A stretch of DNA of 64,000 nucleotides from Ramazzottius varieornatus (taxonomy: Eukaryota > Animalia > Tardigrada): NCBI GenBank assembly GCA_001949185.1, contig BDGG01000006.1:664827-728826 (forward strand). Direction: 5' to 3'. Below the pieces are notes generated by a model. That model had not been told where the DNA came from. It ran no database searches and worked only from the letters and a program-made list of their open reading frames with translations. This document shows positions 31,946 to 61,538 of this stretch, piece by piece (position 1 is the first letter of the stretch; every line of letters starts with the position of its first letter). The translations under genes were made by a program, and so were the position numbers.

Positions 31946-33181
31946 TCAGTGTTGAGGATTGGAAGACAGTCCCAGATTGGACAGCTTCATGACGACGCCT
32001 TCCAGCTCTTTCCCCACGTTCTCAATCAAGTCCTGGACATTCCTCTGGCTGCCATTCTCCGACACAGTTCCACTTCGTCGCGAGTCTCCTGCTCCACCTC
32101 GAGGTAGACTCATCTGCGCTTTTGAATTACTACGCTCCATGGGCGGTGACATAGGCCGAGTTCTTTGCTGTCCACTCATCTGTGGTTCTTCCATCCGTGG
32201 CGCACTGGGTTCCTTCCTCGCCGGAGGGCGACCTTCTTCCGGTCTTGTCGGCAGTCGATGTTCGCTTTGAGGTTTCAACCTACCTTCTCCTGCCAATTTT
32301 TGTCGGATAGCACGGAAACGATCGAGGCGTTCACCCGATGACAAAGCCTTCGATGGTGATTTTTGCGGACCCGGCAGATTGTGACTGGACAAATATGCCA
32401 AAATACGGTCTTCGCGCCGTTGCTCGTCGGCTTTCTTCCTCGCGTAGAACCTCGCCCATTTTTCAGAAGTATCAAGCAGCTGACCTTCTTCGTCTTCTTG
32501 CCCATTTCCTTCCACGTTATTTTCGATAGTTTCCTGAACATCCTCCCGTTCGATTTCCGCCGACTTTCGCACCATACTCGTGTCGGAATGTCGTAGTTTA
32601 CCTTCGGACCCTCTTTCCGTCAATCGCCTTTTCAACGACTTATAAACCTGCGTCCTGAAATCTTTCCAATTTTGCGGTCCACTGTCCGCTTCCGAATCAC
32701 TTTCTTCCTGGTCAGACTGAGGCTGAGGTTGACGTTCCTGGGAAATTTCTTCCCGATGATGAAGATGCGGCTTCCGTCGGTCCGTTCGATGTTTCTCATG
32801 TAACGAACGATCAGACTCACGTCGGAGCGGCAATTTTCGGTCTTCAGATTCACGAGGTTGTGGATTGTCATGACGATCGTCCGGTTGTTCGTCTCGGTAT
32901 GGCAGTGTGGGATGTGACCGAGTTTGTCGTGAACGGCTGGGAGGCTCGGCGACCTGCGCAATCTGGAAGAGCTGGCGTTTCAGACGTTGGTGCTTGCGCT
33001 CCAGCCGGGCATTTTCATCCTGTAAGTGGGCAATGATATCGTTGGCGTACTGAAGGGAAGAGGCGATTTCGTAGTTTATGTTCTCCAGCTCGTCGGTCAG
33101 TTGCACAGAGGGACGCTGCGTCAGTGACGCCCCGTAGCGCTCACGAGCTGTGGCTGGATATTGCCGGGATTCTCTAGGCAT
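31946..33181 (-). CDS. Intronless, highly charged coiled-coil/disordered protein (~411 aa)
   Basis: Long ORF with first ATG at 33181. Coiled coil (ELENINYEI...LKRQL) followed by R/E/S/P/Q-rich hydrophilic sequence. TATA-like TATATA ~55-65 bp upstream. Confidence 0.75.
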   Translation of the reverse strand: MPRESRQYPATARERYGASLTQRPSVQLTDELENINYEIASSLQYANDIIAHLQDENARLERKHQRLKRQLFQIAQVAEPPSRSRQTRSHPTLPYRDEQPDDRHDNPQPRESEDRKLPLRRESDRSLHEKHRTDRRKPHLHHREEISQERQPQPQSDQEESDSEADSGPQNWKDFRTQVYKSLKRRLTERGSEGKLRHSDTSMVRKSAEIEREDVQETIENNVEGNGQEDEEGQLLDTSEKWARFYARKKADEQRREDRILAYLSSHNLPGPQKSPSKALSSGERLDRFRAIRQKLAGEGRLKPQSEHRLPTRPEEGRPPARKEPSAPRMEEPQMSGQQRTRPMSPPMERSNSKAQMSLPRGGAGDSRRSGTVSENGSQRNVQDLIENVGKELEGVVMKLSNLGLSSNPQH

Positions 33182-34832
33182 GTTCACGGCACTTCGAAAA
33201 CACAATGCCGGTCGACCTTTGCGCGCAACCCAGTTCTCTATATATGTATATTCAGACTTCGTTCACGATGAGAGTTGAGATCTGTCAACAAAGGCCACAG
33301 AGTGGACACAATTAGAACAAAGGAGGAACCCGCGTAATTGTCAATTGATGCTGGAGGTTGTCAAGGAGTTTCTCGCACATCCTAGTGGTCTTGGTTCATA
33401 AAGGGGAGGCGAAGTATCAAGAAAATAATTTGAACATGCCAATTGGCGTTCGAAGTATCATTAGCATGCATGGCAAGCTGAGGGTCGACTAACTCAGAGA
33501 TAATTTTTGGACACAAAAACTAAGCTATTTGGTTTTTGTTTCTTATCCCATATTGCGTTCGATCTCATTGTTGCCCTGTAAATCTCACGTTGCCTTTGGT
33601 CATCCGATTTGATGACGTCAAGGTTCCCATGTTGATTTCCTAGGTACTCCCAGGGTAACCATATCGCACATTGAAACCTTGTTGATCCCATGCCGAATTA
33701 ACCATGCCCATCTCATTACGTCACGAGTCCCACATGAAAACCCTTTTGAGAGCCGCATCCAAATCTCCCACATAGAGTACAATGGCGGACCCAGTCTACA
33801 CTGCTGCCACCTGTTGTTCGTGAAGTCATGATTCCACATTGATAAACATGGTCTGGTTTGGCTGTAGAGTCCTACATTTGGGCCACAGTCTTGAACAATT
33901 TGGACCTCTAGCTTGTTTTAGCATTCTTAGTTTGTTTTGAATTGTTGTTAAAGTACCTGTAAATATTCGCTGCGTCCGCCCAGTACGTCATCGTACAAGT
34001 GATGTACAGCCCCGGTCCGGTTTCACGGATCGCGCAACCCCCTACGGGGGTGCATCGTCACGTACGTGTACGCACTGCGTGGATGCAGCGAATATTTACA
34101 GTACCTAACTTGTCTTGTTGTCTAACTTATGTTTGTCGGTTAGACTATTCTCGAGTAAGGTTCTCAGGTGTGCTTCGGGTGAATTTCACTCTTTTCGGAA
34201 TTTTTCTATCGGTAACCTTCTCGGGGTATTTATATCATCAGTTATTCAGTGACAATCCTCACTTCTTTACTACGTCGCCGACAGGGCAGAATAACGGGGA
34301 GTGTGCGGTCAACTTTGAACTCCCCTTTGGAGATTCGAGCAAACGTAGAACAGAACCAAGATGCCGCTTTACAGCCCAGGCAAGTTGTCACGATGATGGT
34401 GTCAGGATGACTTGCACATTTGCGACTTGCAGAACGCAGACTACGCTGTATTCGATTCGACCTTATCTCACAGCCACCATGAAGTAATTCGGAAAAGTAC
34501 TTTAGGGATGTTCCCCGGAGACCTCAGCCGCTCTCCGTTGTGTAGTATTGAATCCAAGTAAATACTGACGTTGTGCTGTTTCCATCGTCGATGAGTGTTA
34601 CGGGCAAACTGATTTGCAATTTCATAAGATTAGTATACCGCATCCGGTACACCTCAAAGTGAAAAACAATCTTGCATTTGTTTGTAGCTCGAGCAGGCTC
34701 TTCAGTAGTTCCCGGAATGGGTAGGAAACCGTAGATGATTGATTTATAGCAACAAGTTACCACACTAGCAGGCGAAAAGACACAATCAAAGAACCGACTT
34801 TACATTACGGAGAAAGCTTGAGGAGTTTACTG

Positions 34833-52325: not shown

Positions 52326-53300
52326 ATGGCTCGTGATCTTGTTTTGGCTGTGTCTTCAGGTGCGATATCGGAACTAGGGTTTCTTCTGCTGAACAGGCAC
52401 AGGAAGCGGCGGCAGACGAAGTGGAACGGTAACAGGTTCAAGCTTTCCCGATTCTCCGATGTTGACTGCATCGAAGTGTTCCGCTTCACCAGGTACGATA
52501 TTCGTCGCATCAGAAGCCTACTGCATTTTCCTCCAAAATTTAAGTTGTGGAATCGGATGGTTGTTCCATCGGAAGAAGTGTTGTGCTTGGTTCTGGCGCG
52601 ACTTTCCTACCCACGTTGGCTGACAGATCTGTGTCCTCTGTTCCTACGGCATCGTACTGTGCTGTCGAACATGTTTAATATTGGGGTGGATTTCATCCAT
52701 GCTCGGACTGCGAATCACCTGTCGTCTCTACAACAGCCATTCATTTCTCCACGACGGCTAGAACTATACGCTGCTAACGTCGACGAGGTTACGGACAGAC
52801 TCACTGGACCCATGAAAGTATGGGCATTCATAGACGGTACAACACGCCCAGTTTGTCGTCCCATTGAGAATCAAAGAATTGTGTACAATGGAAAGGATCG
52901 CGTTCACGCCTTGAAGTTCCAGGCTGTAACCACACCTGGTGGACTGATCATACACCTGGCTGGACCCATCGACGGTGCACGACATGACTCGAAAAAGTCA
53001 ACTTCTGGAACTGGTCGCGGAGAAGATGGCGGCGATTGGGCAAGTTTACAGGCTGTATGGTGATCCGGCTTATTCGTTGAGCGATCATCTGATTACGCCT
53101 TATCGAAACGCCGTAAGACGAAAGCACATCAAGTTCAATGAAATCTTGTCTCAAGTCAGAGTGGCTGTAGAGTGGTCGTTTGGTGAAGTGTTACTGTACT
53201 TTGCTTTTACGGACTTCTCTAAGAACCAAAAATGATGTTACAACCGGTAGCCAAATATTATATTGTTTCTGTCATGCTGACAAATATGCATACATGTGTG
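52326..53300 (+). mobile_element. PIF/Harbinger DDE transposase (HARBI1-like), frameshifted
   Basis: FRFTR; LARLSYP; AFIDGTTRPVCRP; YNGKDRVHALKFQ; GPIDGARHDS; then in the next frame LYGDPAY and FNEILSQVRVAVEWSFG. Confidence 0.92.
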
Positions 53301-56107
53301 TATCAGTCTCTCTGCGGGAAGACTTTCGACATCATGGCGCCAACTCGCGAGGATTAACTAGAAGGAATCCCACTACCCGAGGTATTCTACTTTCAATATT
53401 TGTTACTTCGGATTTGGCTGTTGTTACAACTGTACCTTTTCGATAGGTTATCTACTAACGAACACACTCGAACCTTGACTGCAACATCAACTGCTTCACC
53501 AACTGTAGCTGTGAATGTGGCTAATGCATATTCAACTGTTACTGTGACTGCTACTTAAACTGTGACTTTCGCACACTCTTTGCTTTAGCTTGCCACTGTA
53601 GTTTTCACTGCGACTTCAACTGCGGCTTTAGCAACTGGTTTATCAGCATGCCACTGTGGCTTTAACTGTGGCTTTGCCTGTCCCTGCAATATCCAGCAGT
53701 AAGCCTTTGCGTCGAATTCCTGAGACAGTCAGCCGTCCCTGTAACTGTATCTTCCGCCTACTCTATGCGTAACGAAAATTTCTGGTTACAGTAGACCCAG
53801 AATCTGAATTTAAAGTTTTAGCTTTATTGGACATCATAATACTGGACGGAAACAGATCAGAGGCTGACACTAGTCTATAAAACAACAATCACGGTCGCTG
53901 CAGCATAAACGGTTCCGCGGGAAAATCTGTAAGAACAAAGCAACGGTGACTACACGATAAGTTGGTTGAAGAAGAATAGAATTCTCACGCTGATTCATGA
54001 ATTCCAGAGCTCGGTCTTCAGGACACACGTTCCGAAATACTTTAGGGTTTCCGTTCCCCTTATGCTTAATGCGAGGCGGGTTTGCGCCTGCAGCTTGTGC
54101 TGCCTGGGCAAAGACTTGTCCAGCGTTGTAGCCGAAGGACAGATCTCTAGTCAGAATTGCTCAAAGGTGAGGCGCATCAGAAACCAATTTTTATTTGCTA
54201 AGAAAGTCGCAGTTAAAGACAAAAGGGAATTTAAACAATGGCGAAAGTTACAAATACAGTACTCGTTCTTGATAAATTCAGAGTTAACGTAGCAGTCTTG
54301 CTCCAGTTTTAGAAGCTAAGATTTACTCCCACAGTTACACGGAAATTGTCTTTACCTCTATAACTACCCAAGTCGCAGTTGAGCGTCTGGTTATTACCGC
54401 AGATGGAAATACAATTCAAAACTGCGCTTGAGCGTAAAAGACAGCCAAAAACGCAGTTGGTACTTCGTGGAGTCATTTTGTGATGAAGTCCTGTCCGATG
54501 TACGTCTCACAACAAAGGGCTGTGCCCCATGTACCCCGTGCCGCATCGCACTAAGGCGGCTTCGCCGCCTCCGTGCTCTGGATCTTGCAGTTCGGCCCTT
54601 TTGGACATCGAAGAACCCAAGAGGTTAATGATTTGTACTATATAGACATGTTTCTCGGTGTTTGTTGGACCACGTAATGGCACGTTTCATAACCGACGAA
54701 TATCGCTCGATGTTCGTCCGTATCGCGTGATTTTCCGGTTGGGTGCTGTGCGAGGCTTTTTGTCGGAATCACGGCTTGCTTTGCGTGATCTGAATACTTG
54801 ACCGGTTTTAGTAATTATCACGTTACGCCATGGTCGGACTGGTCCGGGAGGGTGCGCGTTGGATTCAGAGTCAAAGTTACCCCGGACGGCTCATTTTTGT
54901 GTGGTTCGGTGGAATTTCAGGTTTTATCCGTTTTGCTCACGTGATGCTTGATATTCCTGTCCAGGAGCATTTTCATCCCTGAACGTGTATGGCACATTCG
55001 GACGACCGTGTCGAGATCAATAGGATAGTGATATCATTACGACGTTACCTCATATTGATTTTGTTCCCGTCCAACTCATTTATCGACTAACCAAAGTTTC
55101 GAACGAGTTTCTTGGCGCTGGGGTTGCACACGCGCAATGCACTGCAGTCTCCGAGATGCGGACCGCTTGGACGATAAGTTTGTTCTAATATTTGTTTCAA
55201 AGTCTCATTCTACAGTATCTCATTCTTTCTCGCATCGCAGAATCTCGTCAGCGATGTGAGAAAATCTGAAACATCAAATCCAATCGAACAAATGCAACGG
55301 GTAGATTTGAATAATAGAAGGTCCAGAAGCGCTCAGCGTATATCGTCGAATCGGACAATGAAATAAGAGAGAGTCTGAAGGATGGAAGTTGGCGCTCGAC
55401 ACCATCTCACGGTCCAGTTCGGTCGTCAGGGACTAAGATTACAAGGAAAACGTTGTAAACCCGCGTGAATTCGTAAAGATATTCGCAGAAGTAGGCCTCT
55501 CGATAGCACAGTACGACCTCACCAACCCTTCATCCACACGTTCCGTGCAACTTTTGAAGCTGCTTCGACTGAGTTATAATACTTCCTATTGTATTGAGAA
55601 ATAGCTCGAAAAGGTTGAGCAATATGACTTCCGCAGCAGGTAAAATGCCGTCTGCTAAAATTTCCCATTGGAGTTTTCATCCCCAAACTGACGCAAACAG
55701 ACATACAACTGTGTTGGTGGTCACAAAGAATCAAGAAAGAGCAGGAAAGTTCCGAACAAACTTGCCAAACGAATTATCCAGCAATCCGTTGGGCAAGTAT
55801 TATCTAACGAATTACTTGGAGGTATCAAATAGAATGTCAGACCATGACAAAATGATTTCGAAGTGGAACTCGAGTCGAGTCGAGACAGCCTTGATTCAAT
55901 GAGTGGTAGCGAATTGGCTTGGGCGGGCTGTAATCTGAGTAAGCGGACGATTGGATTGCTGTCAGCGTGATATTCGTTCTTCATGCATAGTTACAGGTTT
56001 AGCTTGATTAATTGTCAACATTTTAACAACTCCGTTGATGGTCGAAGGCTGCTGCTGAAATGTATTACCGTATGACGAAAAACCATGAGCAAAAGAAACA
56101 GAGAATA

Positions 56108-56590
56108 CCATTGCGGTCACGAACGTGAGGACATGGCAAATCAGTCAATCGAAACGAAGGCGGAGTTGGGCAGTATATCAATCAAAAGATTGGATCAGCT
56201 TTATTGGTCTGCTGACTGCCCGCAGGCCAGTTACGAGCTTTACGGCAGTGGGCAAGATATCGCAGGGTGTCCTCAAAATGGTCCGAAGTCTTCCGTGGAG
56301 GTCCTTTCTCCTTGGCGACGTTACCACTCAGACGTCGACGCTCCAGGAGATGAAATGCCTTCTCTCGAGCATGTCCGAAGTAACAGAGGTAGCTACGGAC
56401 ATGACAGAAGAGATCACAGGAACTAAAAAGTCAGGAAGACTCCCGGTATCACAAAGGAACACCTGTTACGCCTGAAACAGCTGACTAAACCGGAAACGTT
56501 GATCAAGGCTTTTGATTGCCGTGACGTCACGTCTCACAGTTAGTTTTGATTGACTGATTTGCCATGTCCTCACGTTCGTGACCGCAATGG
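56108..56590. mobile_element. TA-flanked MITE (CCATTG TIR family)
   Basis: Near-perfect ~43-bp TIR CCATTGCGGTCACGAACGTGAGGACATGGCAAATCAGTCAATC with TA on both sides. Confidence 0.9.
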
Positions 56591-56853
56591 TACATCCTAC
56601 ATGGCGGTTATCAACATGATAAAAGCTGTGCGAAAGCTAGCGGACAAGTCAGTCGGCTCTTCGTAAGGGAACGATATCTTCGACTGTCAGATCAACTCAC
56701 ACCCGAATTTTTCACATGGAAGAAAGCTGAAAGCAGGCTCATGAAAGAAAAACAAGCAGTTTTACAAAGTTCGAGCACCCAAGTTTTGCAGCAGGCAACA
56801 GTACCGTTCTGTCCAGCGGGCGGCGGCTGCTGATCCGACCTGTGAAGCCAAAA

Positions 56854-59725
56854 TTAGAAATGAATCTGAACGCGGTGCTTCGCGTCTGATTTCTGTTCGC
56901 TTTTTGGAAGTGCCTGGTCGAGAGGTAGATCAGGTAGCAGGCTTTCTACGGAACCACCACGCGGCCATATCGCCATGCAGAGAACGAATATCATTGAGCC
57001 AAGGTATTCCACTCTCGTCCTGTTCGGGCGAGGTTGAAAATCATCTTCCTGAAGCCGTGTGGTTTCGGCATTCTCGAGTTCTGAGCTGCACGAAGCCGTT
57101 CCGGTTTCATTCTGGAACCTTACTGTAGTGTCTTCATGCCTAAGCATGTGCTGGAGCATCATTCTGTATAAACGGCAATCGCGATCTAATCCACCGCCGC
57201 TCGTCGCGAAACTCTGTTGCAGTACAAATGCCTTCATCTTTCCGTAGAGGCCTTGATACCCATCCTCCACCGCTGAATCCAGGTGATAGCCGTGCATCAC
57301 GACACTCGCCATGCAGATATATTGGTAAGCATGGATGTCGAGGTATTCAAAAGTTTTCGTCGTGGTATTAAACCTGGTTCTCTCGGTTACCGTCGGTGTC
57401 AGTCTCCTTTGCAAAAACTCAATCATTTCGGGATAAGTAGACGAACGAGAGTCTGTTTTCTTATCGACCATCTTGACGCACCGGGACAGCAGATATACCA
57501 TGTCGGCGTATAAAGTGTTTGTGGGACTATAGTCAGTGTTGTTTTCGAGCCAATTCCGTGCAAACTCCGCAATCTTCCTGTGTATATTGGTGATATTGTA
57601 GTCTAAGTCACGCCGATTGAGGTAAGGTCTCCAGTCTTCGTCTCGTCCAACTGAGCTGAGGGCGTTGAAACGTTTGCGAAGTCCATCGTTCAAGCCAACG
57701 GCCGGCTCAGACGACGCGGCATCCCTGGCTTCGGTGGCCTGAACTGGGTTGTTTCCTCCCACTTTTGGTCTAAAAGTTAGCGGACGTCGTCTTTCACGAG
57801 CCTTGACCAGGGTCTTTTCAAACAGTTCATCATTGATGTCCGGCTCGCAGGCTAAATCGTAATCGAAGAAGGCGTCGGGCTTGTCATTTGTGACAGTACT
57901 TTCCGAAAGGAATGGATCGGTTTCATCGGAACTGTTGTCGGAGCCACCAAATGATGCTTCAGCGATTTCGTGTATGGTTTTCCGCCATTCGGAGCGTAAC
58001 TGACTTCTGAAACGGGAATTTAGATAGCGACGGATACGTCGCTTACGAGATCCTGTGCAGCAGAAAGTCAGCAGTCCAATCACGACCATCGTCGCTCCGT
58101 AAAACAGATCCTTTAATGCTGGCTCCCATAGTGTTTGCACTGGCGCTGGCGCTGCTACTGTGGATCGATGAAGCTTTAGACCAATACTGGCATCTATGGC
58201 GCAAAGGTTAGTCTTGCTAGATTTTGAGTACCTGTTTCGGGCTTGTTGCAGCCATACAGAGAGTTTATCTTTTCGAAATCTCCGGGAGTAGTGGCTCGGT
58301 CAACTCTTATTGTACAGTGTCCTCTCGGTAAAAAGGTCGGTTTGTCCGGGTCCATAGCGGTCTCGTTCCACGCGTAATGCTAGATAGTACCATAAGGTAG
58401 GAACGAGACTTTGCGGAAAGTACTCAGAAATAGTGAAGGTGTATTCAAAAATTTCCAGCTAATTCGGCGCTTTGACCATGGCCAACTTCTTTGTAGCCAA
58501 CTAATTTAGCTCGGTTTAGACAACTGGGTTTTCAGTTGACTAAATGAAGTCTTCACTAATATACCTGATTTAGTTATTTCTAGCTGGTATTTAAAGCGCT
58601 AAATTAGCTGGGCCGATTTTCAGCTTTCCCATCAGCAACCTTCTAACACAAGGAACATGGATGATACGTGAATGAGATATTACCATTATGGAATTACAGT
58701 CGTATGGCCATGGGGGATTATAATGGCTTTTGATCTTGAACTGACTCCACATGACTACAAACAGAACAAGGTTTGTTAGTGTACGCGGTATTGCTGTGAA
58801 CAACACTATGCATGCCTTCTGGTATGTTGTCCCACTGGATCTCAACATGTTCATCCCGGTCGCTTCGTTGATGCTCATGATCGACTCCCAACGAATGAAT
58901 AATTTCGTGAATGATAGTGTCCTCGTCCATACAGTCTAGCCCAAGATGGATTTTGTTCACAACACCCATTTCCATTCTCCCAACGTCCGAATAGCAACTA
59001 CAGGTATGCTGAGCAAGATGATGATATTGCCGCGCAGGGTATAGTGCGCGCTGAAGGTGTACTTCAGCCGATTACTCTTACTTGTAGTTTCCTTTGAGAC
59101 GACTGAAATAAACATATTGTTGGTTGTCCGGATCACCATAAATGAACTTCACGCAGGTTTCATTCATTATCCGTTGTATGGCTTTCTTGATTTTGGCCTT
59201 CTCCGTACGGTTATCTGTAATAAAGGTATCGAGATACGGCTTTTCTACAACGAACGACTGCGAGGCTGGGCGATGTCATTTCTACTAACAAGGCTGTCGC
59301 GGAGATAGTCAGTTGCACAGCTGCTGTGAACTGGACTAAAACATTTGCAATGAAACTTACTGAAAGCAGAACTAAACCGATAGTAGACAATCGCACCTTC
59401 CCAGAGAACGATTGTAGCCTACAAAACCGAATATAAGTGGCTGCTACAGCGTGGAGAGACGCAGGAGTTGTACAAATGCGGATTTCGGTGAAATCAGGAA
59501 TAAAAGCTCAAAGCCGCCAAAACGTTCTACCTACAGTACATTGTCATCAGACGTAACATAGTCGGCTACTTGCTGGTCGTTCCATGGTAGACCAACTGTC
59601 TGCGAATCAAACCACGCCACCGACAATCCAAAGATGAGGTACAATTCAATCAAACAGGCAGACAGGCGTTGTCGCTTTAATTTCACAGAATTCGGTAGCC
59701 GCAGTCTGGACAGGCGTGGACACAT
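56854..59725 (-). CDS. Astacin (M12A) metalloprotease predicted to be fused to a TM helix and a large unknown cytoplasmic domain
   Basis: LWEGAIVYY; IKKAIQRIMNETCVKF; CYSDVGR; HEIIHSLGVDHEHQRSDRD; Met-turn SIM|HY; FEKINSLYGC. A 74-nt GT-AG intron (58231-58158) joins this in frame to ORF 56854..58140. The astacin call is strong; the start and the fusion are predicted. Confidence 0.78.
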
Positions 59726-60731
59726 GATACCCAGACTGTCGTAGTTGTAGAAGGTGAGAGGCCAGCGCCGTGTTCCTGACAGCTTAACCTCCCATTATGC
59801 TCGACCAAATGGTAGGATACGTAGTTGCAGCCAGCTGTTTTTTCAGCAAAACTGTTTATCAGGACTGTCTGATAATTCAACCGACAATACGCAGAGATCT
59901 CCGTGGTTTATACGGAACACTCTAGGGTTATTCGGATAGCAGCTTCAGTTAACAAAAGCTTAACAAGAAAGAAAACCTCTCTTCCCGAGTTTGCTCTAGC
60001 GGGCTCGCGATGGCTTTAGTCACATTAGTCGAAACGTTGCGAGTTGACTAAAAACGATCGTGTTCGTACATCGCACGGTTACCAGACGTTGGTGACTGTT
60101 CCTCATAAACGATGTTCTTTTCGCTGACTCAACCGTGTTTTCAAGCTGGTACGCCCGAAGGCCCTAGGTTTGAACGCGAAGCCGGAGCTGATCAGCATCA
60201 GGCAAAAACGATCTTGGATTCTTTCGACTGTATTCTGTGAATGAATCAGCAGGCGACTGATACTGTTCTTTTTTGATACACAAGTGGCCATGACTAATAC
60301 GGCGAAAGTAAAGGAAAAACGCAGTGCAGCAGGCCTGATGACAAAGAAACCAGAGACGGAGAGCAAAGAACGAGAAGGAAATCTGAAGGACGAGAAGAGC
60401 GGAACGTCCGACGACGCGAGTGGTACCAAGTTGACAACCACAATTCAGGGGACGCTTCCGATGAGGCCGGTAACACTGATCAAGATAATGAAAGTGATGC
60501 CGACAACAACGACACCAAACGCCAAACTGAATGCTGCGACAAGGACAAAGACGATATTCCCAGAGGAAACTTGCAAATGACTTCAGTCCGGCCGAGATGT
60601 ACCAGAGTACCCGCAACACGTATCGGCGGACTCCTTTCGATTCCCGGACCTTCGACAGAGCTCATGAATATGCAAGTACATATGGTACGACTGACGATAT
60701 CTTGAGCAGTAGTTTGTAATTCTTCAAGGTA

Positions 60732-61538
60732 CACTGAGCCACATAATTATCTGTCCACCCCTAGTTTTGTTCAAAAATTCATCACTTATTTTGACTAACC
60801 CAATTTTGATATTTAGAACGTATTTATAGAGATCAGTGTTTGATCTTTACGACCACGTGACTACCGTATGAATCAATCAGCAAATCAACTGGCAGTATCA
60901 TTCCTACAAACACCTAAAACTGCCCTGTTTTCGGCTCCGAGTTGCGGGTGCTAGCCAGCAGATAGCACATCCTGCTTGTTACTATTATGTAGCCCCAACA
61001 GTAAGCTTTCAAGTAAGCCCATGTGAGAAATTTTGCAGATATGCAGAAGAAGCTCTGTCGTCGTGTCAACCAGGAAGTATTCTCGGTTATTTTCTGTGGT
61101 GCATATTCACGACGCCTCGTCTTCCACATCCTTGCTGCCAAGCTACGTTTAAATGGTGACACGTTTCTTAAAGATAATCAGGCTTTGTAGTTTGAGTCAT
61201 TCGGTCAGTCGAAACGGAAGATATCGAAAGGTAACCATGAGATAGCGCGTTCCGAAAACAAGTCAGTTTTGTGCTATCTGCTGGCTAGCACCCGCCGGAT
61301 GTGCTATCTGCTGGCTAGCACCCGCAACTCGGAGCCGAAAACAGGGCAGTTTTAGGTGTTTGTAGGAATGATACTGCCAGTTGATTTGCTGATTGGTTCA
61401 CACGGAAGTCACGTTGTCGTAAAGATCAAGCACTGATCTCTATAAAGACGTTCTAAAGATGAAAATCGGGTTAGTGCAAAATAAGTTATGAAGTTTTGAA
61501 CGAAGATGGGGGTGGACGGATGAATATTGGACTCAGGG
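60732..61538. mobile_element. TA-flanked foldback element with ~240-bp inverted arms
   Basis: 60732-60972 is the reverse complement of ~61297-61538. TA on both flanks. An internal tandem duplication of TGTGCTATCTGCTGGCTAGCACCCGC is at 61270-61326. Confidence 0.88.

What the first reader, a model, noticed from the sequence alone, without database searches (positions are those of the whole stretch)
56854..59725. Receptor-like astacin: protease ectodomain + TM helix + ~390-aa unknown intracellular domain
Seen: an intact astacin zinc motif (HEIIHSLGVDHE) and Met-turn (SIMHY). The last protease exon ends ...LYGCNKPET-G|GTACTC. An acceptor at 58158 (CCACAG, 74-nt intron) puts it in frame with the 428-codon ORF, which has no ATG until its hydrophobic segment. 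That ORF gives a short Ala/Pro stalk, a 19-aa hydrophobic helix (LFYGATMVVIGLLTFCCTG), a strongly basic stop-transfer (SRKRRIRRY), an acidic linker and a long, probably helical domain. Known: most astacins are secreted, and meprins are membrane-anchored with only very short tails. Inference: a type-I membrane protease with an intracellular signalling or scaffold module. Retaining the intron gives a stop (…LTFAP*), so a secreted isoform is also possible.
Basis: partly seen in the sequence, partly recalled or inferred. Interest (0 to 1): 0.85.

Follow-up and report, generated by a model that had tools for sequence, protein, structure and literature searches.

The report
Membrane-anchored tardigrade astacin, orphan tail
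A tardigrade (Ramazzottius varieornatus) gene really does splice a complete astacin zinc-protease onto a membrane helix and a 389-residue inner tail that resembles no known protein, but the tail evolves almost freely, so it is an unusual variant of a known protease and no signalling role is shown.

Summary
**Observation: confirmed.** The window is Ramazzottius varieornatus.

**One transcript.**
- Spliced RNA contigs from four studies show all six introns.
- The 74-nt intron (58158-58231) appears in three studies.
- Single contigs link the tail frame to the astacin exons.
- The RNA also adds three upstream exons that the public model lacks. The coding sequence becomes 693 codons, with a hydrophobic N-terminus.
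- One intron is GC-AG, not the GT-AG a reading by eye suggests.

**The protease looks active.** It has the zinc motif, the Met-turn and PF01400 at 70 bits. It sits about 22 residues from a transmembrane helix (Kyte-Doolittle 1.79) followed by a polybasic stretch.

**The tail is an orphan.**
- No Pfam family, no PDB match and no paralogue in the genome.
- No hit among 5.8 billion word-indexed proteins or 1.84 billion HMMER-scanned ones.
- The structure models are unusable (pLDDT 34 and 40).

**Constraint on the tail is weak.**
- Against a diverged strain it shows 15 nonsynonymous and 5 synonymous changes (dN/dS about 0.8; below 0.3 is excluded).
- The frame stays open, and codon usage marks the true frame.

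**Verdict.** This is a new variant of membrane-tethered astacin. The "signalling or scaffold module" reading is unsupported. A regulated secreted isoform has no specific support.

The parts
59540..60035 (-). Exon 1. The 5'UTR starts at about 60001-60035 and holds a 3-codon upstream ORF at 59795-59784. The coding part is 59725-59540 (62 codons). It has a basic N-region, a hydrophobic segment (LSACLIELYLIFGLSVAWF) and a short acidic pro-segment.
   Evidence: Contigs cover 59545-60035 (X9), 59620-60001 (X2) and 59642-59847 (X4). The joint 59418|59540 is seen in X1. The ORF starts at ATG 59725. The Kyte-Doolittle mean is 1.91.
59361..59418 (-). Exon 2. It encodes the start of the mature astacin domain (ATIVLWEGAIVYYRFSSAF).
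   Evidence: Joints 59214|59361 (4 runs) and 59418|59540 (X1). Translation.
59082..59214 (-). Exon 3, astacin domain, Pfam profile positions 18-56. It includes the first conserved Cys (…NETCVKF…).
   Evidence: PF01400 at E 1.8e-4. Joints 58997|59082 (X2) and 59214|59361.
58816..58997 (-). Exon 4, the catalytic core. The zinc motif HEIIHSLGVDHE lies at 58909-58874 and is followed by RSDRD. The public model's start codon (MEMGVV) lies inside this exon.
   Evidence: PF01400 at E 2.2e-19, 70.3 bits. P0001. Alignment to the hatching enzyme 3lqb.
58755..58815 (-). A 61-nt GC-AG intron between exons 4 and 5.
   Evidence: Joint 58754|58816, with ends CT..GC on the + strand, in X2, X4 and X9. The public model uses the same junction.
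58684..58754 (-). Exon 5. It ends in the first three residues of the Met-turn (SIM, 58692-58684).
   Evidence: Joints 58754|58816 and 58379|58684. Sequence.
58232..58379 (-). Exon 6. It starts with HY of the Met-turn (58379-58374), holds the C-terminal part of the catalytic domain up to LYGC, and ends …NKPET-G.
   Evidence: Joints 58379|58684 (4 runs) and 58157|58232 (3 runs). Alignment up to LYGC.
58158..58231 (-). Intron 6, the last intron (74 nt, GT-AG, with a CTAAC branch-like site). If it is kept, the frame stops after 13 more codons, giving a soluble protease.
   Evidence: The joint is in X1, X2 and X9. One unspliced 130-nt contig (58132-58261) is in X1. ORF 58194-58355.
58108..58157 (-). 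Extracellular stalk after the catalytic domain (V-AAPAPVQTLWEPALKD).
   Evidence: Translation and P0001.
58051..58107 (-). Transmembrane helix LFYGATMVVIGLLTFCCTG (tail-frame residues 17-35).
   Evidence: The 19-residue Kyte-Doolittle mean of 1.79 is the highest in the frame.
57976..58050 (-). Polybasic segment next to the membrane (SRKRRIRRY…; 11 Arg/Lys in 25 residues). It is modelled as a helix.
   Evidence: Charge count. Helix 2-25 in the low-confidence model.
56857..57975 (-). Orphan cytoplasmic region. It has an acidic, Ser/Thr-rich linker (tail residues about 61-175) and then a part predicted to be mostly helical (about 176-433). A buried-type hydrophobic patch lies at residues 385-397 (Kyte-Doolittle 1.37).
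   Evidence: No Pfam family, no paralogue and no homologue. Not recognised by the Atlas. pLDDT 34 and 40. dN/dS about 0.8. Codon usage marks this frame.
56501..56856 (-). Stop codon (56856-56854) and a 3'UTR of about 350 nt.
   Evidence: Contig ends at 56501 (X9), 56563 (X1), 56593 (X2) and 56605 (X4).

Best explanation
This is one gene of the tardigrade Ramazzottius varieornatus, RvY_11270, extended here to 7 exons and 693 codons. It encodes a single-pass type I membrane astacin.

**Proposed working.**
- The N-terminal hydrophobic segment takes the chain into the secretory pathway.
- A short pro-segment is removed.
- A catalytic domain with every active-site feature is held about 22 residues above the outer face of the membrane by one helix.
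- The protease therefore most likely acts in cis or close to the cell surface, on membrane proteins or nascent cuticle and matrix.

**The intracellular part.** The 389 residues inside the cell are lineage-restricted and fast-evolving. They comprise a polybasic helix next to the membrane, an acidic and probably disordered linker, and a helical region. This part most likely serves sorting, retention or regulation of the protease. It is not a conserved signalling domain.

**Shown:**
- the exon structure and the fusion in RNA;
- astacin membership;
- the hydrophobic helix and the charge asymmetry around it;
- the lack of detectable relatives of the tail;
- relaxed constraint on the tail.

**Inferred:**
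- the topology;
- catalytic activity;
- cleavage of the signal and pro-segment;
- any role of the tail.
For: **Organism and gene.** There is a 100% match to NCBI RvY_11270 over all 433 tail residues. The genome has 55.8 Mb in 200 contigs.

**One transcript.**
- Six joints with GT-AG or GC-AG ends were found in RNA contigs of four studies.
- A 729-nt contig joins the tail to exons 6-3.
- An 1818-nt contig joins exon 6 to the whole tail and the 3'UTR.

**Astacin membership.**
- PF01400 at 70.3 bits.
- PDB matches to hatching enzymes (1.8e-14), meprins (about 4e-11) and astacin (1.2e-9).
- The zinc motif, RSDRD, the Met-turn and LYGC are all present.

**Membrane helix and charge.** Kyte-Doolittle 1.79 for the helix and 1.91 for the N-terminal segment. 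There are 11 basic residues in the 25 that follow the helix.

**The tail is real coding sequence.**
- Chance of such an open frame is 1.5e-10.
- Codon-usage log-odds are +0.01 in the true frame, against -0.32 and -0.36 in the other two frames and -0.2 to -0.7 in the UTR and introns.
- The diverged strain X9 has no frameshift in the coding sequence. Its only indel there is a 3-nt insertion. Its 3'UTR diverges 2.5 times faster than the coding sequence (p 0.0036).

**The tail is an orphan.**
Against: - No topology predictor, proteomics or activity data were available. The N-terminal segment has an unusually long basic N-region and a 19-residue hydrophobic core, so it could be an uncleaved signal anchor.
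- The tail holds six N-x-S/T sequons. That would fit a lumenal location better than a cytoplasmic one, but the count is not decisive.
- The tail shows 15 nonsynonymous and 5 synonymous changes, spread 6/9/5 over codon positions. This cannot be told apart from neutral evolution, so the tail may have no specific function.
- The protein language model does not recognise the tail (recognition 1730 and 1311, in the range of shuffled sequences).
- All RNA evidence comes from assembled contigs, not raw reads, so isoform ratios are unknown.
Confidence: 0.6

Rival explanations
1. The tail is a young extension with no real function. A gene fusion or splice capture added a membrane helix and a long open frame to an ordinary secreted astacin. 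Only the anchoring, if anything, is under selection. The rest drifts and will decay.
For: - dN/dS is about 0.8, and neutrality is not rejected (p 0.78). Changes are spread evenly over codon positions.
- No homologue exists anywhere, and no paralogue in the genome.
- The language model does not recognise it.
- GC3 (0.53) and the codon-usage score are lower than in reference astacin exons (0.64 and +0.21).
Against: - A 433-codon frame is very unlikely to stay open without selection.
- The frame is kept in a lineage 2-5% diverged, whose only coding indel is in frame.
- The coding sequence diverges 2.5 times more slowly than the 3'UTR.
- The true frame is clearly marked by codon usage.
- The composition is rich in Asp and Glu, as in real proteins.
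Confidence: 0.25
2. The gene is a two-isoform switch. Regulated retention of the last intron gives a soluble secreted astacin that ends …LTFAP. Splicing gives the membrane form.
For: - Retention gives an in-frame stop after 13 codons.
- A 130-nt contig in X1 spans the whole intron at a depth of 3.4, like the spliced joint at 3.7.
- It is the last intron. By the general rule for nonsense-mediated decay (my own knowledge), the retained form would not carry a downstream exon junction.
Against: - Introns 5, 3 and 1 are also found unspliced in X1 or X9, so the signal looks like general pre-mRNA or DNA carry-over.
- Three studies show the spliced form, and only one run shows the retained form.
- Contigs cannot give ratios.
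Confidence: 0.12
3. The zymogen is tethered at both ends. The N-terminal segment is an uncleaved signal anchor, so the pro-enzyme spans the membrane twice with the catalytic domain in the outer loop. Removing the pro-segment frees the N-terminus and leaves the C-terminal anchor.
For: - The N-region is 20 residues long with 6 Arg/Lys, and the hydrophobic core is 19 residues with a Kyte-Doolittle mean of 1.91. This is longer than a typical cleaved signal (and my own knowledge of signal peptides).
Against: - A small-residue site after …LSVA fits the -3/-1 rule for signal peptidase (read from the sequence).
- No predictor was run.
- All characterised astacins have cleaved signals (PMC9848320).
Confidence: 0.1
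4. These are two separate genes, or the fusion is an assembly or chimera artefact, so the astacin and the tail are not one protein.
For: - The tail has no relatives.
- The public model lacks the N-terminal exons, which shows the annotation here is imperfect.
Against: - The same canonical GT-AG joint is seen in three independent studies.
- Long contigs cross the joint, with 137 and 149 nt on the shorter side.
- The frame has no start codon before the helix.
- No contig suggests a separate start.
Confidence: 0.03

Closest known systems
Meprin beta (and meprin alpha), the vertebrate membrane-bound astacins
   Same: It has an astacin catalytic domain outside the cell on a type I single-pass anchor. 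PDB matches to meprin chains reach E of about 4e-11. It may act as a surface sheddase.
   Different: - There are no MAM, TRAF or EGF domains. Only about 22 residues separate the catalytic domain from the helix.
- The cytoplasmic part is 389 residues. Meprin tails are a few to a few tens of residues (my own knowledge; the review PMC9848320 lists only a 'cytoplasmic tail' element).
- It is not an orthologue. The catalytic core is equally close to fish hatching enzymes.
ADAM family (M12B metzincins)
   Same: Both are type I membrane zinc metalloproteases with sizeable cytoplasmic tails. ADAM tails are poorly conserved and rich in short motifs that govern trafficking and regulation (PMC6232257; my own knowledge). 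This is the nearest analogue for how the protein may work.
   Different: - The catalytic family is different. Reprolysin profiles score only below threshold (E 0.06-0.2).
- There are no disintegrin or cysteine-rich domains.
- The tail is longer than most ADAM tails and carries a single PxxP.
Ovastacin, an astacin with a C-terminal disordered domain of unknown function
   Same: An astacin catalytic domain is followed by a lineage-specific C-terminal region that has no recognisable domain and is linked to membrane association (PMC9848320).
   Different: Ovastacin's region has no clear membrane helix and stays outside the cell. Here a clear helix and a positive-inside signal place the region in the cytoplasm.
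Other astacins of the same genome (about 69 exon matches to PF01400; closest at C6:1.16-1.17 Mb)
   Same: They belong to the same family, have the same short-intron gene style, and are 45-48% identical in the catalytic-core exon.
   Different: The closest paralogues continue into Cys-rich and LysM-type secreted domains, the architecture that PMC9848320 shows as 'LysM RAMVA'. None carries a sequence like this tail.

Membership tests
Astacin family (MEROPS M12A, Pfam PF01400) | Match to the family profile above the curated cut-off | tested here: met
   Exon 4 alone scores 70.3 bits against a cut-off of 22.5 (E 2.2e-19). Exon 3 scores 21.7 bits. PDB astacin-family chains match at E 1.8e-14 to 2e-8.
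Astacin family (MEROPS M12A, Pfam PF01400) | Extended zinc motif HExxHxxGxxHExxRxDRD | tested here: met
   HEIIHSLGVDHEHQRSDRD at 58909-58853. It aligns to the same motif in 3lqb. Phe is replaced by Val after the Gly.
Astacin family (MEROPS M12A, Pfam PF01400) | Met-turn SxMHY with the Tyr zinc ligand | tested here: met
   SIMHY lies across the exon 5/6 joint. RNA contigs and P0001 confirm it, and it aligns to SLMHY of 3lqb.
Astacin family (MEROPS M12A, Pfam PF01400) | Four conserved cysteines of the catalytic domain | tested here: inconclusive
   Cys residues stand at the expected places (…ETCVKF…, N-CYSDVG, LDCMDE, LYGC). Only the last two are covered by a tool alignment. Pairing was not modelled.
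Astacin family (MEROPS M12A, Pfam PF01400) | Signal peptide and pro-segment in front of the catalytic domain | tested here: inconclusive
   A hydrophobic N-terminal segment (Kyte-Doolittle 1.91) is followed by a 23-residue acidic stretch. No signal-peptide predictor was available, and the usual FxGD pro-motif is not seen.
Astacin family (MEROPS M12A, Pfam PF01400) | Zinc-dependent endopeptidase activity | not testable with these tools
   This needs the recombinant ectodomain and a peptide or protein substrate assay.
Meprin subfamily | MAM, TRAF (MATH) and EGF domains between the catalytic domain and the membrane helix | tested here: not met
   Only about 22 residues lie between LYGC and the helix. 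The Pfam scan of the 433-residue frame finds none of these domains.
Meprin subfamily | Type I membrane anchor with a short cytoplasmic tail | tested here: not met
   The helix is present (Kyte-Doolittle 1.79), but the tail is 389 residues.
ADAM / reprolysin (M12B) | Reprolysin-type catalytic domain plus a disintegrin domain | tested here: not met
   Reprolysin_3 and Reprolysin_4 score only at E 0.06-0.2, below their cut-offs. There is no disintegrin match.
   A six-frame search of the whole genome finds only the locus itself. No Pfam family matches at E up to 1 except a chance-level CASP_dom hit.

The most novel reading that the evidence does not exclude
The tail is a tardigrade-born intracellular domain, possibly of de novo origin, that makes the protease a two-way device. 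Either intracellular partners gate where and when the surface protease acts, or cleavage of the anchored protein releases the tail as a signal. It would then be a receptor-like astacin with no counterpart in other animals.
Probability: 0.1. Interest if true: 0.7.

Novelty: new variant of a known kind. Interest (0 to 1): 0.35.

Why it matters
The family review (PMC9848320) describes astacins as extracellular proteins. In what I read and know, the meprins are the only characterised membrane-anchored members, and their tails are short.

This gene shows that an astacin can be tethered directly to the membrane by a minimal stalk and can carry a large intracellular region. It also offers a clean case of a long orphan coding extension fused to an old enzyme. 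That can be used to ask how new protein sequence is born and kept.

In practice, the public model of RvY_11270 should be extended by 133 residues at its N-terminus. As it stands it lacks the secretion signal and a third of the catalytic domain.

The value is limited for three reasons. The tail has no inferable function, it evolves almost freely, and it is known from one species only.

Tried and rejected
- **Sequence searches for the tail.**
  - Pfam: only a chance-level CASP_dom hit at E 0.032.
  - Six-frame search of the own genome: only the locus itself.
  - Word-indexed search of 5.8 billion proteins: only the public model itself.
  - Full HMMER scan of 1.84 billion representatives: no hit, not even the protein itself, so that library may not hold this species.
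  - PDB sequences: nothing beyond the astacin part.
- **ESM Atlas.** Queried with the whole tail and with its helical part. Best scores were 0.85 and 0.76, recognition was low, and the families were unrelated (polysaccharide lyase, restriction enzyme). I treat these as chance.
- **AlphaFold2 on a single sequence.**
  - Run on the 389-residue tail and on its last 260 residues.
  - pLDDT was 34 and 40.
  - I ran no fold search, because matches to such models are meaningless.
- **Closest relatives of the protease part.** Region 1-127 of the public protein gave only four word-sharing candidates and no hit but itself. Shorter relatives were out of reach because of the length window.
- **My own first splice guess.** I put a GT donor at 58806 between exons 4 and 5. 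RNA shows a GC donor at 58815 instead.
- **Internal repeats and short motifs.** No internal repeats were found. The short motifs are several YxxΦ, one PxxP and one di-Leu, which is too common a pattern to argue from.
- **Literature.** No paper mentions RvY_11270. Searches for "astacin" with "tardigrade" found nothing on this gene.
- **Joined spliced model.** Exons were used one by one by reference. The only joined sequence used was the public protein P0001, which covers exons 4-7.
Full report
**What the window is.** The tail frame matches, at 100% over all 433 residues, the NCBI protein "hypothetical protein RvY_11270 [Ramazzottius varieornatus]". UniRef names it Metalloendopeptidase; it is 560 aa and carries PF01400. 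The assembly has 55.8 Mb in 200 contigs, and the window is contig 6, 664827-728826. So this is a tardigrade nuclear gene on the minus strand, with short introns.

**Checking the observation.**
- The zinc motif HEIIHSLGVDHE lies at 58909-58874.
- The Met-turn SIMHY is split over two exons.
- The last protease exon ends …LYGCNKPET plus one G at 58232.
- A GT…AG intron of 74 nt spans 58158-58231.
- An open frame of 433 codons runs from 58155 to 56857. Its first ATG lies inside the hydrophobic helix.
- With the intron kept, the reading stops after …LTFAP.
- Pfam gives Astacin at E 2.2e-19 for exon 4 alone and 1.8e-4 for exon 3.

**Is it one transcript?** I laid contigs of four runs from four studies on 56000-60800. 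The runs are not on record as RNA, but the contigs carry intron-sized skips with splice-site ends, so they are RNA.

The six joints are:

| Joint | Intron length | Type | Seen in |
|---|---|---|---|
| 58157\|58232 | 74 nt | GT-AG | X1, X2, X9 |
| 58379\|58684 | 304 nt | GT-AG | all four runs |
| 58754\|58816 | 61 nt | GC-AG | three runs |
| 58997\|59082 | 84 nt | GT-AG | X2 |
| 59214\|59361 | 146 nt | GT-AG | four runs |
| 59418\|59540 | 121 nt | GT-AG | X1 only |

- One 729-nt contig (X2) runs from inside the tail frame (58021) through exons 6, 5, 4 and 3.
- One 1818-nt contig (X9) holds the 3'UTR, the whole tail frame and exon 6.
- Transcript ends lie near 60001-60035 and 56501-56605.
- The exon lengths give a coding sequence of 186+58+133+182+71+148+1301 nt, which is 693 codons.
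- I checked frame continuity by arithmetic and by translating each exon by reference. Exons 4-7 agree with the public protein.
It starts at an internal Met in exon 4, so it lacks 133 N-terminal residues, including the hydrophobic signal segment.
- My own first guess of a GT donor between exons 4 and 5 was wrong. The RNA and the public model use a GC donor.

**The protease part.**
- The domain has the full extended zinc motif followed by RSDRD, the Met-turn with its Tyr, and Cys residues at the four expected places.
- It aligns to solved hatching enzymes (E 1.8e-14), meprins (about 4e-11), crayfish astacin (1.2e-9) and BMP1 (2e-8).
- It is a divergent member. The nearest paralogues in a genome with at least 69 astacin exon matches are 45-48% identical in the core exon.
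- Those paralogues continue into Cys-rich and LysM-type secreted domains, not into a helix and tail.

**The membrane helix and topology.**
- The segment LFYGATMVVIGLLTFCCTG has the highest 19-residue Kyte-Doolittle mean in the frame (1.79).
- The N-terminal segment of exon 1 scores 1.91.
- A second patch near the C-terminus scores 1.37, which is more like a buried helix than a membrane span.
- The 25 residues after the helix hold 11 Arg/Lys and one acidic residue.
- By the positive-inside rule (my own knowledge), the tail is placed in the cytoplasm and the protease outside. Only about 22 residues lie between the end of the catalytic domain and the membrane.
- Two caveats apply. The N-terminal segment is long enough to be an uncleaved anchor. 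The tail holds six N-x-S/T sequons.

**The tail.** No method finds a relative.
- Pfam gives nothing.
- The six-frame search of the own genome finds only the locus itself, so the tail is not a repeat or transposon.
- 5.8 billion word-indexed proteins yield only the public model.
- A full HMMER pass over 1.84 billion representatives yields nothing.
- PDB sequences yield nothing.
- The language-model atlas gives low recognition and unrelated best hits.
- Single-sequence AlphaFold2 models are unusable (pLDDT 34 and 40). They suggest a mostly helical region after an unstructured acidic linker.

**Is the tail real coding sequence, and is it constrained?**
- An open frame this long has a chance of 1.5e-10 per position. 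About 0.02 are expected in the genome.
- I built codon-usage log-odds against 20 astacin exons from elsewhere in the genome. The true frame scores +0.01. The other frames score -0.32 and -0.36. The UTR and introns score -0.2 to -0.7. The reference exons score +0.21. GC by codon position shows the usual dip at position 2.
- Run X9 carries a lineage that differs from the reference by 48 letters over the 1818-nt contig. That is 19 of 353 in the 3'UTR and 29 of 1304 in the coding part, a ratio of 2.5 (p 0.0036).
- The only indels are a 9-nt insertion in the UTR and a 3-nt in-frame insertion in the tail.
- Of the 20 listed coding differences (codons 155-433), 15 change the residue and 5 do not. They are spread 6/9/5 over codon positions.
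- dN/dS is about 0.82. Neutrality is not rejected (p 0.78), but values below 0.3 are (p 0.03).
- The tail is therefore translated sequence that keeps its frame, with weak constraint on its residues. Eight further differences in the tail and those in the catalytic exons were not listed, so I could not compare the two halves of the gene.

**Secreted isoform.** One 130-nt contig in X1 crosses intron 6 unspliced. Other introns (5, 3 and 1) are also seen unspliced in X1 or X9. This fits general pre-mRNA or DNA carry-over. Because intron 6 is the last intron, a retained form could be stable, so the idea stays open but has no specific support.

**How it most likely works.**
- It is a membrane-tethered astacin whose active site sits close to the cell surface, so it suits cleavage of neighbouring membrane or matrix proteins.
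- The polybasic helix next to the membrane may lie on acidic lipids.
- The long, fast-changing tail more probably carries sorting or regulatory contacts, as ADAM tails do, than a conserved signalling fold.
- All of this is inference. The shown facts are the transcript structure, family membership, the helix and charge pattern, orphan status and relaxed constraint.

**Comparison with known systems.**
- It is a member of the astacin family.
- It is not a meprin. It has no MAM, TRAF or EGF domains, and its tail is long.
- It is not an ADAM.
- The family review describes astacins as extracellular, and its only cytoplasmic-tail element belongs to the meprin-type architecture. It describes an unrelated disordered C-terminal domain in ovastacin (PMC9848320).
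- I found no paper on this gene.

**Verdict.**
- It is a new variant of a known kind.
- Interest is moderate to low. The fused model is already public in truncated form, and the tail offers no mechanism and shows little constraint.

Noticed in passing
window 58755-58815 (-): A GC-AG intron of 61 nt, confirmed by RNA contigs of three runs. A GT eight bases downstream would also keep the frame, and it misled my reading by eye.
   Followed up: yes
window 59540-59725 and 59082-59418 (-): The public protein model RvY_11270 starts inside exon 4. RNA joints add three upstream exons (133 residues), which include the secretion signal and the first third of the catalytic domain.
   Followed up: yes
window 59784-59795 (-): A three-codon upstream ORF (ATG GGA GGT TAA) lies in the 5'UTR, 70 nt before the start codon.
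   Followed up: no
window 56501-60035, run X9: Run X9 (2022) carries the same organism label but differs from the reference by about 2% in coding sequence and 5% in the 3'UTR, with two small insertions. This is a second strain or a close species, and it is useful for tests of selection across this genome.
   Followed up: partly
L003 203-1120 (-) and L005 495-860 (-) (G000:C6, about 1.16-1.17 Mb): Three tandem astacin paralogues continue into repeated Cys-rich modules (…W.GNWA..CDFPG.DL…) and, in L005, a LysM-like end. This is the 'LysM' tardigrade astacin type shown in PMC9848320.
   Followed up: partly
window 52326-53063 (+): An open frame of 245 codons has a weak DDE_Tnp_4 (Harbinger-type transposase) match at E 6e-5, just under the Pfam cut-off. 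It is probably a transposon remnant.
   Followed up: no
window 56085-56475 (+): Open frames on the other strand converge on the 3' end of the gene. An X2 contig reaches 56438 and then continues with 166 letters unlike the window. It is probably a neighbouring gene, spliced or variant.
   Followed up: no
window 31946-33205 (-): This is the only other open frame above 400 codons in the window (419 codons). It has no Pfam family at E 0.001.
   Followed up: no
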